Source of the DNA: Selaginella moellendorffii
Taxonomy: Eukaryota; Plantae; Lycopodiophyta
Direction: 5' to 3'
Assembly: GCF_000143415.4 (NCBI RefSeq)
Contig: NW_003314330.1
Location: 968,228-1,032,227, forward strand
Length of the DNA stretch: 64,000 nt
Positions 29,267 through 56,433 of the stretch are shown here, in pieces. The stretch's first letter is position 1, and the number at the start of each line of letters is the position of its first letter. Made by a program: the position numbers and the translations under genes. A model generated the notes under the pieces. That model was not told the DNA's origin. It did not search any database and was given only the letters and a program-made list of their open reading frames with translations.

Positions 29267-29366
29267 NNNNNNNNNNNNNNNNNNNNNNNNNNNNNNNNNN
29301 NNNNNNNNNNNNNNNNNNNNNNNNNNNNNNNNNNNNNNNNNNNNNNNNNNNNNNNNNNNNNNNNNN
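29267..29366. other. Assembly gap (100 N)
   Basis: N run. Confidence 1.
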
Positions 29367-44491: not shown

Positions 44492-46443
44492 ATGGGGCAA
44501 GCTGGCGACGGTGAGAGAAGCTGTGATCGCCTGCTCCAATCTGGATGCTGGCGTGACGGTGTGGGATTTGGCGTCGGGCGTGCCGCTGTCGCACCTCCGA
44601 TCGTGCGCGGCGCCGCGCAATGCCTTGGCGTGTGTTGGACATCATTTCCTGGCGGCATCGCAGATCCACAAGACTGCTAACAATGCCGGCGGCGCGATCT
44701 TCTTCTGGACCTGGCACAAGGTGAGTGAGAGCAGGAATCGATCGATTTCTTCTTGCCAAAATCTCGAATTTGATCGGCCGTTTCATTCATTTTCTTTTCC
44801 TCTGCGTAGAACCAAGTGGCTTTCAAGAGCTATCCCGTGGAGCCGATCGAGCCCCTAGCTTGCACTGCCGATGGAGTTTACTTGGCGGGAGGAGGATCGT
44901 CGGGAAGAATTTATCTCTGGGAGGTGAGACTTCTCTTAACTTCGTGATTCACCCCATGACACGGGATTCTGGCAAAGGTCTCGAGTGGAAGATTGCTGCG
45001 AGTGTGGGCCGGGCACTACAAAGCCGTCAAGTGTCTCGTCTTCTCCGACGATGATTCGCTACTCATCTCTGGTGCCGAGGATGGACTTGTCAATGTCTAT
45101 CCTCTCGTGAGGTAAGTTTGCTCCGATCGATCGAGCTTTTCTCCTTGAAGCTTTCTTCTCATGCTTTCCGGCTTCCTTCCAGGGCCCTGGACAGCATCGA
45201 AGAAGCCGGGGAGACCCAGGTACCTTACATGCACAAATGGTCGGATCACACACTTCCAGTCACTGGATTGCTGGCCGGCTCTGGTGGTTCTAGCGCGATC
45301 ATCGTCTCGTGCTCACTAGACCACACCTGCAAGGTACGTTTCTTTAGCTCTTCGCAGCAGCGTGTTAGTTTTTCCAGCTTACCGCGAGAGTTTGTATAGA
45401 TATGGAGCTTGGCTCTCGGAGCTCTACTCCGGTCGATACTCTTCCCCACTCCCATCAATGCTGTTGCACTTGATCCAGGGGAGTACGCGCTCTACGCCGG
45501 TGGAGTCGATGGCAGGATTTTTATCACGGCTCTAAACTTCGGTGTTCCATCGGGGTCTGGCTTGCATTCCGCGGATGGGCTACTCGGTGCTGACGGGATC
45601 GGCCACAGGTTGTGTGCTTTCTAAAGTTTTGTTGTTCCAATCCACCCGTCCGACTGCTTTTGACTAATCTGGAGTTGTTCTTGATAGAGCAGCCGTGCTA
45701 TTACTGCTCTAGCATTTAGCATGGATGGGGTGTCGCTCGTCTCTGGCTCCGAGGACTGCACTGTCCGGTTGTGGGACACCGTGAGCCGCCAGGTTCTTCG
45801 GACGTTTTCTCACAGCAAAGGTGACCGACCAAAGTTTCTTTTTGTCTCTCCCAACGCAAAAGTTGCTTTGCTTTGCTGGTTTCTTGCAGGTCCTGTGAGC
45901 AGCCTTTTGGTGATACCACGGCCCTCGTCCCTGCTCAGCTCTACAGATCAGCAAGGCCGTCAAATCAACCGTCGCTTACCAACGCTTCCAGTGGTTCCGT
46001 TGAGCAAGTACGTAACAGTCGAGTCAGTGGCACAAGACTTCAAGCCTTGGGAAGGCCCCCCGGTTGTCCTTCCGTTAACTTATCCTGCTGATGACGAGGA
46101 TGCCGAGGGTTACTCTCACAGTATGGTCGCCATGGGAAGACAAATAAGAGAACTAGAGGTAAGAAAGGGTTTTTTGCCTGGATGAGAGACCATTGACGGG
46201 TTTTGATGACAGCAACAAGGCTCCACGGCAGCGATGCAAATGGAGCTGGAGAGATTGCGATCGGAGCTCCGGCGGGCTCTAAACAATGGCCAGCAGTGGC
46301 AGCAATTGCACCAAGAACTTTACTGTTTCTGCGTGGACGAATTGATGGGTGGGAACCGGGACAGGGAAGACGACGACGGAGAGAACAAGGAAAGAACCAA
46401 GGGAAGAGCCAGCAAGGTGGGGGACAAGATGCGTGACAAGTAA
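44492..46443 (+). CDS. RID3: WD40 protein, RID3/IPI3/WDR18-like (pre-rRNA processing), spliced; start codon anomalous
   Basis: VIACSNLDAGVTVWDL, GRIYLWEV, WAGHYKAV, WSDHTLPVT, SGSEDCTVRLWD and a C-terminal coiled coil. Confidence 0.8.
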
Positions 46444-46462
46444 GCACAGATTTTGAGGAGGT

Positions 46463-48997
46463 TTAGGAGGTAGTGGATCGGGTGAGAGACGCTGCTCGAT
46501 TAGAAGTTGTCAATTTTTGCACAGCCTATTATAACCAGACTTTGCGTTAGAGGACGAAAAACTGAGTTGATAATATATATATACGTACTTGCATCGCAGC
46601 TAAGCGTCTTGCCACGCGCTTCTCTTCGTGCTCGCAGCAGCTGACGCGCTCATTGTCGATCACAACATCGGCGCGTATGAAACCGTCCACCTCAGTGCAC
46701 TGGATCTCGAGAGCAAGTCTTTGCTCTCTACACAAGGTCTCGAGCTGCTTGACTGGATGGAGCATCACGTTTTCCGGAGTGGCGATTGGTTCTAAGAGCC
46801 TTTCATACACCTGAAGATGAGAGAGGTTATAAGAAAGTATACTCCAATCAATACGACTTACCTTCCAAACAATATCTGGTTCGTACTCGGAGTCGATAAA
46901 AATTGAAGCTGCCAGTGTTTGAATCACGTCTCCAAGCAGCTGAAACAGAGAATAAGCAGACAGGATAATTGGAGAACTTGGCTTACTTTTGGTGAGTTTA
47001 GTCTGGAAATGCCGAAAGTCGAGCATGCTTTCCCCCTTGCATGCTCTTCGACAAGTGATTCTGCGAACTCGGCAATTTGAGGGACGAAGTGGACCTTCTG
47101 AAGATAAACGTGGAAGCCGTGACGAATACTAATGCAGGAGTAGTGCTCCTTGTTGATCGTTGCCTGCTTTATGGTGTTGTGGCGACCGGCCGACTGGTCC
47201 GGGAATGATCTGACCAAGTGCCGTGTCACGAGGTAGTCCAGCACTGCATCGCCGAGAAACTCTAGACGCCTGAAAGTGAAGTTGTCGTCATGAAAGCTCA
47301 GAGCAACTCGCAAGACCTGCTTGTTCCTGAACTGATAGCCGAGTTTCTCTTGTAGTTCCTTCAAATCATCATCTGTTAATGATCCGCAGCCTGTGACTTC
47401 GAATCTGTGATGATCTTCGGCCTCAGGAGGAAACCGGACTGGTATCTGGAGCCAGTTCGCTGCTGCCATAGCGGCAGCAAGTTCCCCTTCCAGCACGCAT
47501 GCCCCCAGAACGGCTTCTACTACGTCCGCCAGCGTCTTCGTCGAGAGCAGTTGTTCCGGAATCTTTGCCGCTGCTGGTATCATGCCCGGAGATATCCACT
47601 TCAGCGGCGAAAACATCTCCGCAAATACATACCGGTACAGATTCCGAGCTAGTGCCAAACTGGAAAGCGTGCTGTTGCAAACTATATTGTACAGCTCCAG
47701 GCCAAGCTCTTCACTGCCCATCGAAGGCATCGTCGCGTAGACATACGTTCCAGCGACGATCTTCAGCACGCTGTCTCCTAACAGTTCTAGTGGCTCGTAA
47801 GATACATTGAAACAGCATGCTCTGGATGTCAAAGCCTCCAACAGCTAAAACCACGTTTCAGTCCTCCAGATAACAAACTTGCTACGAATTGTACCTTCAA
47901 AGCTGAGACCGGGACGTCCATTGCATCACGCAGTTCTGCGGCTAGCAGTGCCATCTCAAGCCTGTACATAACAGAAGGAAGCCGAAGAGCGCCTCTATGC
48001 AAGCTTCCCGGTAGTAAAGTTTTCGAAAGTACGCACTCCCTTCTTGAAAAGGTGACGGCTCTTAGCTTTTTCGTTAGTGTAGCACCTGGAAAGAAGAAAC
48101 TCAGATCAAATGGTGATAGATAATTAGAGTTTCATACCATTGTGTTTCGTGAGATAGCTCAGTGCCCGGTGCGCCCTCACAGCAACAACTTCGTTCGAGT
48201 GTTTCGATAGAACGACGCACGATTTTCCAGAGCAAAGGATCAAGCTGTCAATCGCGATCTTCTCGTTCGAGGCCTGTGCTTCGGAAGCGATCATCGAGTC
48301 AGCGTAATGCAAACCGGAAGAAGTTGCAGCAGCCATCAAGTTCCAATCCACGACCAGCTTAAACTCCTCTCTCCTCCATCGCCAAGTCTCTAGCAGTGGA
48401 ACGGCATAGTAAAGCTTTGGACCCTCTCGGTACTCCGATAGCCTCGCGTCTTGGGAGCGGCCCAGGACGAGATCGAAAAGCCATTTGGTAAATTCTTTGA
48501 TCTTCACCACCTGGAATGAAAAGAGATCCAAGTAAGAAACTTCACACAAAGAGAGAGTATACTGTATAGTATACCTCGTCCGAGGAAACCAGCACTTCTC
48601 CAATCTCCTCTAGATGGGCACGGACTATGGAGTTTTCTTGGAGGAACAATTCCACTACCATCGCTGCCACGGCTGGATCGACTCTGGTGGGTAGAAGGAT
48701 TCCAAACTCCGTGGCGTGCCGTTGCAATGGATCCTTGCCTTCCATCACAAGCTCATAGCGTATGGCCACGGCATGGAACAAGATCCTGTCCGACGAATGG
48801 TCGACCCTTGGACTTGCCTGGACGACACCAGGAATGCCGCGCTCGTAGTGCCGTGGCGATGCAGTGAGCGGCGATTTGCCATCGCTAGGCGGCACAAGGG
48901 GATATTTCTTCTTGCCTGAATCTGGAGCAGCATTGCAATGGGAGACTTCCCCCAATGCCGTGACAAGATCGTCGATCTTCTCCTCCATGGCCTTCAT
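46463..48997 (-). CDS. Atypical Dicer-like RNase III (~735 aa): platform, connector, RIIIa, RIIIb and dsRBD; no helicase/DUF283, PAZ core absent
   Basis: Seven exons join in frame with GT-AG introns: 48997-48575, 48510-48138, 48085-47895, 47844-46987, 46939-46862, 46810-46589, 46525-46463. Motifs LELLGDSVLK, LADVVEA, RLEFLGDAVLD, HPVKQL. Confidence 0.85.
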
Positions 48998-49500
48998 CGC
49001 TCGCAGGAACGCGAATTTCCAGCTCCGATCGACTCGGAGAGCGAGAGAAAACCAGAAACCTCGAACAACAGGAGAAGATCCACCGATTCACCTCAGATAC
49101 CTTCGGCGCTTGCAATCGCCGCCAAGGACGAGACTTTAGAGCTTGGATCGGCTCCGAGAGGGAAGGAAAGCTGGGCCAGCAACGCGATCGACCTCAAATC
49201 TTGCAGCGAGCTCCATGGAGGGAAAAACAATGGTGAAGAACAACCTAGTGATCCAACGGCTGGGATTTGCCGCGAGGTTTCATTAAACTCATATCCAAAA
49301 TTTGTTTCTGTAGAGACGATCTTTGGCTGCCACTCAAGCCTCTAGATTTAAATACTATGGGAGAGAAACAAAGCTTCCATCTCGAATCTAGAACAAAGCA
49401 TCTCTGCAAATAAAAAATATTCTTAGAAAGAACTTTGGCGATGGTAATATAAGATCATAGAAAGTGAAAAATCACGTTAATTCGCCTATGGTTTGTTTGT

Positions 49501-51647
49501 TTACTCGACCACATTGCGTATGAGTAGCCTGTAAGTGCCGAAGGAGTTCTTACTTTGCCATGCCCAGGGAATAAAAAACGCGCGGTGGAGACGAGGTGAG
49601 CTCTCATTGTCCAGGAACAAGCGTTTAGCCACGACCTGTTAGAAAAATACTCTTAGAGAATCTGGCAAGCGTAAACAAGCACGTACAGTCCATTTGGTTT
49701 GATTGTTTCCACGATACTCTACGCCCGGTCTGTCTAAGACTAGCTCCACCACAAAGTCACAGGAAGCGTCGCTTTGGAGCTGAGACAGGGATTTCGGAAG
49801 AGTGAGAACCTTCGAAAGAAAATAAGTAACGAGATGAGATCTAACTTACAAATTGCTTTGGAGAAGCGTTGTTATGCCTGTTGAAGTAGTCCGGAGCTGC
49901 TTTCGTTCCACCCAGGCTGCTATCGAATGGAAACGGCATAAGTCCTCTAAAGCCATCGTCGAGCCATCTCACTTGGTACTTGGCTGACGGCAGAAAGAAC
50001 GAGGATGGGAAACGGTGCCACTCACTGCCAATGCAAACTGCATTGAAACGCAGGAGTTAAGAGAATTGAAACTGCGAGGCTTGCCTGTGGAATTCTCGGT
50101 TGGATTAGTTGGAAGGTGTTTGTAAATCTGCATCGGTGCCGAGTAACCTTGAAGTAAAGACGTTGTTCGACTATACGATGCCACCAGGATGAAAGATAAG
50201 AGCAAAGGCCTCAATTTCGTGAACAGACCATGCACGAAGCTCATTTTTCGTGGTACCAGACCTGGAATCCGCTCGATGCTAGCTGCCGCAGCTACGCAAA
50301 CGAGGGGATAGGTTGGATAGAGGAACCTGAAAAGAAAAAAAGCTGAGTGAACTAAGATAGAGAGCATAGTTTTGATACCTTTCTTCTTTGTGAGGTTGCA
50401 AGGACATGAATCCAAACCACAAATACAAAGGTGAGATTACCAGTAGGAGATGCTTGTCGGTACTTCGTCGCACGAAAAGCAGCAAAACAGGTAGCCCGAA
50501 CGCCAACAACAACGCAAGATTGAAATTGTTGAGCCCATTCCGAAGATAAAACAAGGGTCCCTCCACACCGTATAAAATGCTGTCGCCACCTCCCACGACA
50601 TTGTAGGTGACGAGGTTGAGAATAGAAAGCTTCCACTGACCGTAAAATAATCGATCACATAGTGCTGACAGCGCCTGTATAGACAATCAAGTTGAGTTTC
50701 CAGGAGAATATCCACCAATTTATAAGAGACAAGAGGAACTTACGATGAGAACGACTGAGGATTTAACACCGGCCATGAAAACCTTGACGGAGCTACCATT
50801 CGCCAAAGAGTACACTACCACGGGAAGAACCGCAAGGCCCGAGAATGGCCAGCCAACAAGGACCCCCAAGGCAGCCACGGCCACGGCAGCTTCAAACTTA
50901 TCGGCAAGCACAGCCGCTGATGCAAGGCTGATAGCGTACATTGAAAAGGTGCTCGGCAGAAAAGCTGAGAAAGGAGAAAAAAAACAAGAAAAGTGAGTGA
51001 GAACAGCCTGAGAATTTTTCCTTACTTGTGCTGGCTGTGTAGCAACCACTGGCAAAGCAGAGTAAAACCAAAGTGTATGATGCCATCCTTTTTCCAAACC
51101 TTTCGGACACGGCTGCCACAAGAGCTCCATCGACGGCCGCAGACACCAAGGCGAATGCCAGTTTAATCAGATAGAAAACTTTCACCTGGAAAAGGAAGAT
51201 AAACACTTAAGAGCATTTCAATCAAAAGAGAAACTTTCCTACCTTTGCGAGAATGTAAGAAGCTGGAGCTCCAATAACGGCATGAATCAGGATGTAAAGA
51301 TACGATCGAAGAGCAAACTCCGAGCTAGTCCAGAGAAACGAAACTCCAATTATTTTAGCGAGAGAACAGACACTCTCTAAAGCTCTCACTCACCTGTACT
51401 CCCAAGTTTGAAATCCCGATCCATAGAGAAGAAAATGCAGCGGCTCCCAGTAATTGAAAACCTCGTCGCAGTCGTGTACGATGTTGGAGCTCGCGCTGAA
51501 GTAGCGAGTGATGAAGAGCGCGGCGAAAGCCGCAGCAAATCCGACATTCTTACTGACCTCCGGAAGATCCTTCTTCTTGGCATCCTCTTCTTCGCTGTTA
51601 ATCTCTGCCGAGGAGCGATCGCGCCTCCGCTGCCGGAGCTCAGCCAT
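49501..51647 (-). CDS. ALG9: Dol-P-Man alpha-1,2-mannosyltransferase (GT22), spliced
   Basis: DCDEVFNYWEP, FQTWEY, AFLPSTFSMY, QPHKEERF, EWHRFPSSF. Confidence 0.93.
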
Positions 51648-56333: not shown

Positions 56334-56433
56334 NNNNNNNNNNNNNNNNNNNNNNNNNNNNNNNNNNNNNNNNNNNNNNNNNNNNNNNNNNNNNNNNNNN
56401 NNNNNNNNNNNNNNNNNNNNNNNNNNNNNNNNN

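What the first reader, a model, noticed from the sequence alone, without database searches (positions are those of the whole stretch)
46862..46939. RNase IIIb catalytic Glu replaced by Gln: predicted dsRNA nickase or half-dead Dicer
Seen: RIIIb reads LLGDVIQTLAASIFIDS (CAA codon at 46919-21) where the consensus is GD(I/V)xES. RIIIa retains all four acidic residues (LELLGD, ADVVEA). Known: this position corresponds to E. coli RNase III E117 and human DICER1 E1813, where substitution removes cleavage by that site but keeps binding. Inference: the enzyme would cut only one strand of a duplex, or act as a competitor/regulator of silencing.
Basis: partly seen in the sequence, partly recalled or inferred. 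Interest (0 to 1): 0.8.

Follow-up and report, generated by a model that had tools for sequence, protein, structure and literature searches.

The report
Spikemoss mini-Dicer with one dead blade
This Selaginella gene is a stripped-down Dicer-like RNA cutter in which one of the two cutting sites lost its key glutamate; the same loss is found in every relative from mosses, liverworts, lycophytes and ferns, so the whole family probably cuts only one strand of double-stranded RNA.

Summary
A seven-exon, expressed gene on the minus strand (CDS 48997-46463, 735 aa) has a complete RNase IIIa tetrad (E349, D353, D436, E439). Its RNase IIIb reads E524, D528, D619, Q622, with CAA at 46921-46919. Q622 aligns with AtDCL3 E1329 and the matching AtDCL1 Glu.

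CAA is not an error or a private mutation. It is in an RNA contig and in both Selaginella moellendorffii haplotypes.

The gene is the Selaginella orthologue of MINIMAL DICER-LIKE (mDCL). The clade has 100/100 support and includes the Physcomitrium protein taken to be mDCL and the Marchantia orthologue.

All 16 clade sequences keep the RNase IIIa tetrad. None has the RNase IIIb Glu: 13 have Q, one K, two P. Of 340 other Dicer-family proteins with a residue aligned there, 336 have Glu.

Engineered E-to-Q mutants of AtDCL3 and human DICER cut one strand only. AtDCL3 E1329Q makes only the 23-nt product, and moss mDCL is required for 23-nt siRNAs.

The most likely reading is an ancient single-site, strand-specific Dicer. 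The Selaginella copy has also lost PAZ. The family is known, but I found no paper noting the dead site. No biochemistry was done here.

The parts
46463..48997 (-). Whole coding region of the Selaginella moellendorffii mDCL orthologue: 7 exons, 735 aa, ATG at 48997-48995, TAA at 46465-46463. The mRNA 5' end reaches at least 49314.
   Evidence: Splice joints and a 2955-nt RNA contig of run X1; spliced translation with an in-frame stop upstream of the ATG.
48573..48997 (-). CDS exon 1 (aa 1-142). It aligns with the N-terminal region of other mDCLs and with the region just upstream of PAZ in DCL1. No Pfam domain found.
48136..48508 (-). CDS exon 2 (aa 142-266). This is where PAZ lies in orthologues. 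About 75 residues of the PAZ core are missing, and there is no PAZ hit.
   Evidence: Alignment gap relative to the Diphasiastrum, Marchantia and Ceratopteris proteins. Pfam finds PAZ in P0002, P0318 and P0308 but not in the window exons or P0319.
47895..48083 (-). CDS exon 3 (aa 267-329), connector helix region (RLPSVMYRLEMALLAAELRD).
46987..47844 (-). CDS exon 4 (aa 330-615): RNase IIIa and the first two thirds of RNase IIIb. Catalytic residues: E349 (47787-47785), D353 (47775-47773), D436 (47526-47524), E439 (47517-47515), E524 (47262-47260), D528 (47250-47248).
   Evidence: Pfam PF00636, 1.3e-29, two stretches. phmmer to AtDCL3 8.8e-37 and AtDCL1 4.8e-36. Codon coordinates.
46860..46939 (-). 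CDS exon 5 (aa 616-642): second catalytic helix of RNase IIIb, LLGDVIQTLAASIFIDS. D619 at 46930-46928; Q622 (CAA) at 46921-46919 where Dicers have Glu.
46588..46808 (-). CDS exon 6 (aa 642-716): linker and one dsRNA-binding domain.
   Evidence: Aligns with AtDCL1 residues 1690-1789, which include its first dsRBD. The model of the other haplotype's allele shows helix, three strands, helix with pLDDT above 90. Pfam dsrm is below threshold.
46463..46524 (-). CDS exon 7 (aa 716-735 and the stop). It carries a 12-nt in-frame deletion relative to the other haplotype and to runs X1, X8 and X10.

Best explanation
The gene is the Selaginella moellendorffii orthologue of MINIMAL DICER-LIKE (mDCL). mDCL is a deep-branching land-plant clade of helicase-less Dicer-like proteins.

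Shown here:
- The RNase IIIa site has all four acidic metal-binding residues, in this gene and in every clade member.
- The RNase IIIb site has Gln (elsewhere in the clade Lys or Pro) in place of the last Glu. In several lineages it has lost further acidic residues.
- RNase IIIb as a domain is about as conserved as RNase IIIa.

Inferred:
- RNase IIIb is a catalytically dead but structurally needed partner that completes the intramolecular RNase III pseudo-dimer and still contacts RNA.
- Only RNase IIIa cuts, so the enzyme nicks one strand of a duplex. In canonical Dicers that is the strand whose 3' end overhangs (the non-measured, 3p strand).
- In the wider clade this fits production of the 23-nt class of heterochromatic siRNAs together with DCL3.
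- The Selaginella protein has also lost PAZ. It cannot measure from an RNA end by itself and probably relies on its dsRBD or on a partner for positioning.
For: Gene model and expression. Correctly spliced RNA contig and raw stranded RNA-seq reads. Open 735-aa frame.

Residue equivalence. Q622 aligns with AtDCL3 E1329 and the matching AtDCL1 Glu. E439 aligns with AtDCL3 E1146.

Both haplotypes carry CAA.

Phylogeny. The clade has 100/100 support, holds the Physcomitrium protein P0318 and the Marchantia polymorpha protein P0308, follows the species tree and is sister to all canonical plant DCLs.

Catalytic residues across the clade. RNase IIIa is EDDE in 16 of 16 sequences and the RNase IIIb Glu is present in 0 of 16.
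- Q: two Selaginella haplotypes, Diphasiastrum, Physcomitrium, Ceratodon, Sphagnum, two Marchantia species, Riccia fluitans, Calypogeia, and loci L001 and L002.
- K: Riccia sorocarpa.
- P: Ceratopteris and a fern-like Logan protein.
- Extra decay: Sphagnum reads SNAQ, ferns ADDP and ADVP, Calypogeia VDDQ.

Background. 336 of 340 other Dicer-family proteins have Glu at this position.

Domain conservation. Mean pairwise identity in the clade is 0.475 for RNase IIIa and 0.442 for RNase IIIb. Canonical DCLs show the same ratio, 0.542 and 0.515.

Purifying selection between haplotypes. dN/dS is 0.41 overall and 0.27 over aa 330-715, p = 0.0025.

Structure. The model of the other haplotype's allele has pTM 0.74, with the RNase III domains mostly at pLDDT above 90. 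Its best Foldseek match is the AtDCL3-RNA complex 7vg2.

Literature.
- AtDCL3 E1329Q cuts only the non-measured strand, giving a 23-nt product (PMC8846587).
- Human DICER E1813Q and E1564Q give single cleavage while keeping base-pair recognition (PMC11487123).
Against: No enzymology exists for any mDCL, so activity of RNase IIIa and inactivity of RNase IIIb are both inferred.

Selaginella lacks PAZ, so the 23-nt measuring model may not transfer to this species.

Expression is low, with raw-read depth of about 1-3.

dN/dS of 0.41 indicates fairly relaxed constraint.

The other haplotype carries a 1-nt deletion at codon 170. If real, it truncates the N-terminus.

Marchantia mutants of the orthologue show few small-RNA changes under standard conditions (PMC11799827), which also fits a regulatory, non-cutting role.

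One review describes the moss 23/24-nt phenotype the other way round (PMC10721683). The primary paper (Coruh et al. 2015, PMC4568501) is not held.
Confidence: 0.6

Rival explanations
1. The protein no longer cuts RNA at all. It binds dsRNA or other DCLs and acts as a regulator, competitor or scaffold of silencing (a pseudo-enzyme).
For: The RNase IIIb site is dead by analogy. Selaginella has lost PAZ. Marchantia mutants of the orthologue change few small RNAs in standard conditions, and the authors propose that it regulates DCL1a-dependent miRNA output under salt (PMC11799827). dN/dS is fairly relaxed at 0.41.
Against: All four RNase IIIa acidic residues are invariant in 16 of 16 clade members over more than 450 million years. 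The same four positions in RNase IIIb decay freely. That contrast is hard to explain unless RNase IIIa still catalyses cleavage. Moss mDCL is needed for a specific siRNA size class.
Confidence: 0.22
2. The Gln-bearing RNase IIIb site is still active, for instance with a different metal or a compensating residue, so the protein is an ordinary two-strand Dicer.
For: Gln can still hydrogen-bond RNA and might weakly ligate a metal. The other three acidic residues (E524, D528, D619) are kept in Selaginella, Diphasiastrum, Marchantia and Physcomitrium.
Against: The identical change abolishes cleavage by that site in AtDCL3 and human DICER, and Aquifex RNase III E110Q was used to obtain pre-cleavage RNA complexes. 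Other lineages replace the residue by Pro or Lys and lose further acidic residues, as in Sphagnum SNAQ and fern ADVP. This shows the site is not maintained for catalysis.
Confidence: 0.07
3. The CAA is a sequencing error, a private mutation or a sign of a decaying pseudogene.
For: The public model for this haplotype is a 219-aa fragment (P0001). The other haplotype has a 1-nt deletion in exon 2, and one DNA contig (X8) has a 1-nt deletion in a C5 run at 47032.
Against: CAA is present in an RNA contig with 0 differences, in both assembled haplotypes and in 13 of 16 clade sequences. The frame is open for 735 aa and correctly spliced. dN/dS is significantly below 1. The short public model comes from reading into an intron.
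Confidence: 0.02
4. Two mDCL molecules pair so that two live RNase IIIa domains form an intermolecular processing centre, as bacterial RNase III or yeast Dcr1 do, and cut both strands.
For: None directly. Class 1 RNase III enzymes work as homodimers (general knowledge).
Against: RNase IIIb is conserved as a domain. The model folds as a Dicer-like intramolecular RNase IIIa/IIIb pair and matches DCL3 and Dicer dicing-state structures.
Confidence: 0.05

Closest known systems
MINIMAL DICER-LIKE (mDCL) of Physcomitrium patens (Coruh et al. 2015) and Marchantia Mp6g09830 (called MpMDCL in PMC13738684 and MpDCL1b in PMC11799827)
   Same: Same clade at 100/100 support. No helicase or DUF283. Two RNase III domains with RNase IIIa EDDE and RNase IIIb ending in Gln. 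One C-terminal dsRBD-like domain.
   Different: The Selaginella protein lacks the roughly 75-residue PAZ core that Pfam detects in the moss, liverwort and Diphasiastrum proteins. A Plant J. 2025 survey did not list a Selaginella member. An earlier paper knew it only as a 'truncated' RNase III fragment (PMC5144951).
Arabidopsis DCL3 E1329Q (engineered RNase IIIb mutant, Loffer et al. 2022, PMC8846587)
   Same: The identical residue change at the aligned position. That mutant cuts only the non-measured strand, to 23 nt.
   Different: DCL3 is a 1580-aa enzyme with helicase, DUF283 and PAZ, and its change is artificial. Here the change is natural, ancient and sits in a 735-aa protein.
Human DICER1 RNase IIIb hotspot residue E1813 (DICER1 syndrome; E1813Q in PMC11487123)
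   Same: Equivalent metal-binding Glu of RNase IIIb. Substitution leaves RNase IIIa cleavage, giving single-strand cleavage.
   Different: In humans these are somatic or mosaic disease alleles of a full-length Dicer. Here it is the fixed wild-type state of a gene family.
Drosha (class 2 RNase III)
   Same: Architecture without helicase or PAZ: two RNase III domains plus one dsRBD. Drosha structures are matched by Foldseek.
   Different: Both Drosha sites are catalytic. Drosha ranks below plant DCL and animal Dicer structures (rank 26 and lower). Sequence and phylogeny place the window protein among plant DCLs.
Second short DCL of S. moellendorffii (P0045, XP_002989272.2, 608 aa, DCL1 clade)
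   Same: Helicase-less, and RNase IIIb Glu replaced by Gln (VLGDVFQSL).
   Different: It belongs to the DCL1 clade. It also has Asp replaced by Asn in RNase IIIa (EDNE), so both sites are compromised, and it carries two dsRBDs. The change arose independently.

Membership tests
MINIMAL DICER-LIKE (mDCL) clade of land-plant DCLs | Groups phylogenetically with P. patens mDCL and Marchantia Mp6g09830, apart from DCL1, DCL2, DCL3 and DCL4 | tested here: met
   Maximum-likelihood trees of the RNase III region give the clade 100/100 support, with internal branching that follows mosses, liverworts, lycophytes and ferns plus Ginkgo. Members are named. Diphasiastrum 06G085000 and Ceratopteris 13G041700 are the same genes listed as homologues in PMC11799827. 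That P0318 and P0308 are the published Pp3c24_9630 and Mp6g09830 genes rests on species, length and clade, not on a matched identifier.
MINIMAL DICER-LIKE (mDCL) clade of land-plant DCLs | No N-terminal helicase or DUF283 | tested here: met
   The mRNA contig ends at 49314 with in-frame stops upstream of the ATG. The next gene upstream is a GT22 glycosyltransferase.
MINIMAL DICER-LIKE (mDCL) clade of land-plant DCLs | PAZ domain followed by two RNase III domains | tested here: inconclusive
   Two RNase III domains are present. PAZ is absent: there is no Pfam hit and the alignment has a gap of about 75 residues. Membership rests on phylogeny, and this member is a PAZ-less variant.
MINIMAL DICER-LIKE (mDCL) clade of land-plant DCLs | [quoted passage not shown] | not testable with these tools
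   Known only from literature on P. patens.
Canonical Dicer / DCL (class 3 RNase III) | Helicase, DUF283, PAZ, RNase IIIa, RNase IIIb and dsRBD | tested here: not met
   Only RNase IIIa, RNase IIIb and one dsRBD-like domain are present.
Canonical Dicer / DCL (class 3 RNase III) | Complete acidic tetrad (E, D, D, E) in both RNase III domains | tested here: not met
   RNase IIIa is EDDE. RNase IIIb is EDDQ.
Drosha (class 2 RNase III) | Closest sequence and structural kin are Drosha proteins, with both sites catalytic | tested here: not met
   PDB phmmer gives DCL3 and DCL1 at about 1e-36 against Drosha at about 1e-9. In Foldseek, Drosha ranks 26 or lower. The RNase IIIb site is incomplete.
Fully dead RNase III-like pseudo-enzymes | Catalytic residues missing in all RNase III domains | tested here: not met
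   The RNase IIIa tetrad is intact here and in all 16 clade sequences.

The most novel reading that the evidence does not exclude
mDCL proteins as a family are natural strand-specific dsRNA nickases. The RNase IIIb site died (Glu to Gln) before bryophytes and vascular plants split, and RNase IIIa alone cuts the non-measured strand of Pol IV/RDR2-type duplexes. This would be the biochemical reason why moss mDCL is needed specifically for 23-nt siRNAs, mirroring the engineered AtDCL3 E1329Q enzyme. Early land plants would then have split the two Dicer cuts between two proteins.
Probability: 0.35. Interest if true: 0.8.

Novelty: new variant of a known kind. Interest (0 to 1): 0.66.

Why it matters
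mDCL is a genetically characterised but biochemically unexplained Dicer relative of non-seed plants. It is needed for 23-nt siRNAs in moss, and in Marchantia its orthologue affects salt response and is induced by virus infection.

The result here is that every member has an intact RNase IIIa site and a dead RNase IIIb site. The residue change is the same one that makes AtDCL3 produce only the 23-nt strand. This gives a concrete mechanism that can be tested directly: a one-strand Dicer. It would be the first natural, evolutionarily fixed example of a state otherwise known only from engineered mutants and human tumour alleles.

The work also corrects the public gene models of the Selaginella gene (219 aa and 609 aa instead of 735 aa). 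It adds Selaginella, in a PAZ-less form, to a family that a 2025 survey did not find there.

Tried and rejected
Searches that led nowhere:
- Word-index homologue searches with the clade profile A1 and with Diphasiastrum residues 540-805 missed most clade members and returned mainly seed-plant DCL2. This is a filter artefact (length window and word sharing), not evidence of DCL2 affinity. The trees put the clade outside all canonical DCLs.
- Only the third search, with the Marchantia protein, recovered the mosses and the other Selaginella haplotype.
- Pfam on the N-terminal exons found no PAZ or any other domain.
- The primary mDCL paper (PMC4568501) is not held. Whether its authors noted the Gln could not be checked. 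Full-text searches for catalytic or active-site remarks on mDCL, MpMDCL and MpDCL1b found none.

Explanations rejected:
- Sequencing error or private mutation (reads, both haplotypes, orthologues).
- Pseudogene (open spliced frame, dN/dS below 1).
- Missed exon explaining the PAZ gap. The RNA contig is continuous, and the intron between exons 2 and 3 is only 52 nt.
- Drosha membership.

Limits and compliance:
- Run X10 carries another organism label but is nearly identical, so it was not counted as an orthologue.
Full report
**What is in the sequence**

The stretch 46862-46939 lies on the minus strand, inside a gene with very short introns of 47-64 nt.

Reads were laid on 46300-49600. A 2955-nt RNA contig of run X1 defines six GT..AG introns. 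In plus-strand coordinates the skipped stretches are 46525-46587, 46809-46859, 46940-46986, 47845-47894, 48084-48135 and 48509-48572. Raw stranded RNA-seq reads of run X23 and contigs of run X10 show the same joints.

Splicing these exons gives an open frame of 735 aa, from ATG 48997 to TAA 46465-46463, with in-frame stops upstream of the ATG.

The finding's stretch is exon 5 (46860-46939). It encodes LLGDVIQTLAASIFIDSEYEPDIVWK, with CAA at 46921-46919.

**Is the Gln at the catalytic position?**

phmmer against PDB chains aligns exon 4 with AtDCL3 (8.8e-37) and AtDCL1 (4.8e-36), covering RNase IIIa and the first part of RNase IIIb.

It aligns exon 5 with AtDCL1 VLGDIVESIAGAIFLDS and AtDCL3 LGDVVESIAGALLIDT.

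The tagged DCL3 chain is offset by +41 residues. With that offset Q622 matches native E1329 and E439 matches E1146. These are exactly the two glutamates that Loffer et al. changed to glutamine.

The eight metal-site positions read E349, D353, D436, E439 in RNase IIIa and E524, D528, D619, Q622 in RNase IIIb.

**Error, allele or fixed state?**

- The X1 contig matches exon 5 with no difference. X8, X10 and X23 list no difference at 46919-46921.
- The neighbours' alleles on another scaffold are named Selaginella moellendorffii, which identifies the organism.
- The other haplotype's allele was found as P0319 (609 aa) and fetched as locus L003. It has CAA at the same codon, with the neighbouring V620M change that is also seen in X8 and X23.
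- The two haplotypes differ at 2.0% of coding sites and 3.1% of non-coding sites. dN/dS is 0.41 overall and 0.27 for residues 330-715 (p = 0.0025 against neutrality).

**What family is it?**

An exhaustive phmmer search with exon 4 returned, as closest relatives, short proteins from:
- Diphasiastrum (805 aa),
- Riccia (720 aa),
- Ceratopteris (906 aa),
- Ginkgo (a partial model),
- Logan assemblies.

A further search added Marchantia, Calypogeia, Riccia sorocarpa, Sphagnum, Ceratodon and Physcomitrium patens.

Trees of the RNase III region place all of these with the window protein in one clade with 100/100 support. The clade is sister to all canonical plant DCLs. Its internal order follows mosses, liverworts, lycophytes and ferns plus Ginkgo.

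This is the MINIMAL DICER-LIKE clade. The literature describes mDCL in Physcomitrium (Coruh et al. 2015, cited). It describes Mp6g09830 in Marchantia and lists the same Diphasiastrum and Ceratopteris genes as homologues. I take P0318 and P0308 to be the published moss and Marchantia genes on the basis of species, length and clade; no identifier was matched.

No Selaginella member is in that list. An earlier paper mentions only a truncated S. moellendorffii DCL next to mDCL. The reason is visible here. The public model for this haplotype is a 219-aa fragment that reads into the intron before exon 5 (P0001). The model for the other haplotype retains an intron and starts in another frame.

**The key comparative result**

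- In all 16 clade sequences RNase IIIa is EDDE.
- None has Glu at the last RNase IIIb position.
- Gln is found in both Selaginella haplotypes, Diphasiastrum, Physcomitrium, Ceratodon, Sphagnum, two Marchantia species, Riccia fluitans and Calypogeia. It is also found in two Logan loci whose next exon I translated (L001 VVGDVLQTV, L002 GLGDLLQTL).
- Lys is found in Riccia sorocarpa. Pro is found in Ceratopteris and a fern-like Logan protein.
- Several lineages have lost further RNase IIIb acidic residues: Sphagnum SNAQ, ferns ADDP and ADVP, Calypogeia VDDQ, Riccia sorocarpa GDDK.
The four exceptions are versions of one other Selaginella gene.
- RNase IIIb as a whole is about as conserved as RNase IIIa within the clade (0.442 against 0.475 mean identity). 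Canonical DCLs show the same ratio.

The simplest history is one Glu-to-Gln change before bryophytes and vascular plants diverged. After that the site's acidic residues were free to drift, while the fold and the RNase IIIa site stayed under constraint.

**How it most likely works**

What is shown is one complete and one incomplete catalytic site, conserved in that asymmetric state. The rest is inferred from engineered enzymes:
- AtDCL3 E1329Q leaves domain A active and cuts only the non-measured strand, to 23 nt on a substrate with a 1-nt overhang.
- Human DICER E1813Q and E1564Q give single cleavage. The Gln still supports base-pair recognition in the minor groove.
- Aquifex RNase III E110Q was used to obtain structures of pre-cleavage RNA complexes.

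From my own knowledge, E. coli RNase III E117 substitutions bind but do not cut.

I therefore read mDCL as a single-site Dicer that nicks one strand. Moss mDCL is reported as specifically required for 23-nt siRNAs and as dependent on DCL3. This fits an RNase IIIa-only enzyme strikingly well. One review states the size effect the other way round, and the primary paper could not be read.

**What is special in Selaginella**

Orthologues have a Pfam-detectable PAZ domain: P0002, P0318 and P0308. The window exons and P0319 have none. The alignment shows about 75 residues of the PAZ core missing within exon 2. The RNA contig leaves no room for a missed exon.

A model of the other haplotype's allele has pTM 0.74, with the RNase III domains mostly at pLDDT above 90. 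The retained-intron segment is below 50. The model matches AtDCL3-RNA (7vg2), mammalian Dicer in the dicing state and DCL4 best. Drosha ranks lower.

Without PAZ the protein cannot anchor an RNA end itself. Positioning must come from the dsRBD or from a partner.

**Rivals**

- A purely non-catalytic regulator remains possible (about 0.2). The Marchantia mutant data lean that way. The invariant RNase IIIa tetrad argues against it.
- A still-active Gln site is unlikely, given the engineered mutants and the Pro and Lys replacements elsewhere in the clade.
- Error, private mutation and pseudogene are excluded by the reads, the haplotypes, the orthologues and dN/dS.

**Novelty**

The family and its lack of a helicase are known. 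I found no paper in the held library that mentions the state of the catalytic residues in mDCL, MpMDCL or MpDCL1b. The original 2015 paper could not be checked.

New here are:
- the clade-wide dead RNase IIIb site,
- its match to the DCL3 E1329Q phenotype,
- the full-length, PAZ-less Selaginella member.

An earlier first-stage note on an overlapping window of the same genome (s1-374860) reached the same reading.

Noticed in passing
P0045 (XP_002989272.2 and XP_002965641.2, other scaffolds of the same genome): A second helicase-less DCL of S. moellendorffii (608 aa, DCL1 clade, two dsRBDs). RNase IIIa has Asp replaced by Asn (LANVVEA) and RNase IIIb has Glu replaced by Gln (GDVFQS). Both sites look dead, and the change arose independently of the mDCL clade.
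   Followed up: partly
window 48424 (exon 2, codon 170) against L003: The other haplotype (GL377589.1) has GG where the window has GGG. If real, this 1-nt deletion shifts the frame and would leave only an N-terminally shortened protein. The RefSeq model there starts in the other frame. No laid run showed the deletion, but coverage is thin.
   Followed up: partly
window 47032-47036 (exon 4, C5 run): The DNA contig of run X8 lacks one C of the run, which would shift the frame just before the Gln exon. It may be a homopolymer error or a real null allele in that accession.
   Followed up: no
window 46927 and 46480: Allelic differences: C>T at 46927 gives V620M, two residues from the Gln (GDMIQT). 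There is also a 12-nt in-frame insertion behind 46480 in the C-terminal tail. It is present in X1, X8, X10 and the other haplotype but absent from the window.
   Followed up: yes
window 46924-47583 (public model P0001): The public protein for this locus is a 219-aa fragment that starts inside RNase IIIa and runs into the intron after exon 4 (…NSPKVSQVLQLSCLLILCFSCLET). It therefore lacks the Gln exon and the dsRBD. This probably explains why surveys list no Selaginella mDCL.
   Followed up: yes
window 46300-46521: Strong RNA-seq coverage on the opposite strand (depth 20-50) belongs to the 3' end of the convergent WD40 gene (about 44500-46450, plus strand). The two genes' 3' ends abut or overlap, which could yield natural antisense RNA.
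   Followed up: no
P0316 (Sphagnum fallax BDL97_14G057500): In the Sphagnum mDCL all four RNase IIIb metal-site residues are replaced (S, N, A, Q) while RNase IIIa stays EDDE. This is the most advanced decay of the dead site in the clade.
   Followed up: partly
L001 4001-5450 and L002 654-1830 (Logan runs SRR33208241 and SRR33208280): Two unannotated mDCL loci from unidentified plants have the intron at the same position before the Gln exon, and they also read Gln. L002 groups with the leafy liverwort Calypogeia. L001 is unplaced within the clade.
   Followed up: partly
window 29267-29366 and 56334-56433: Two runs of 100 N (assembly gaps).
   Followed up: no
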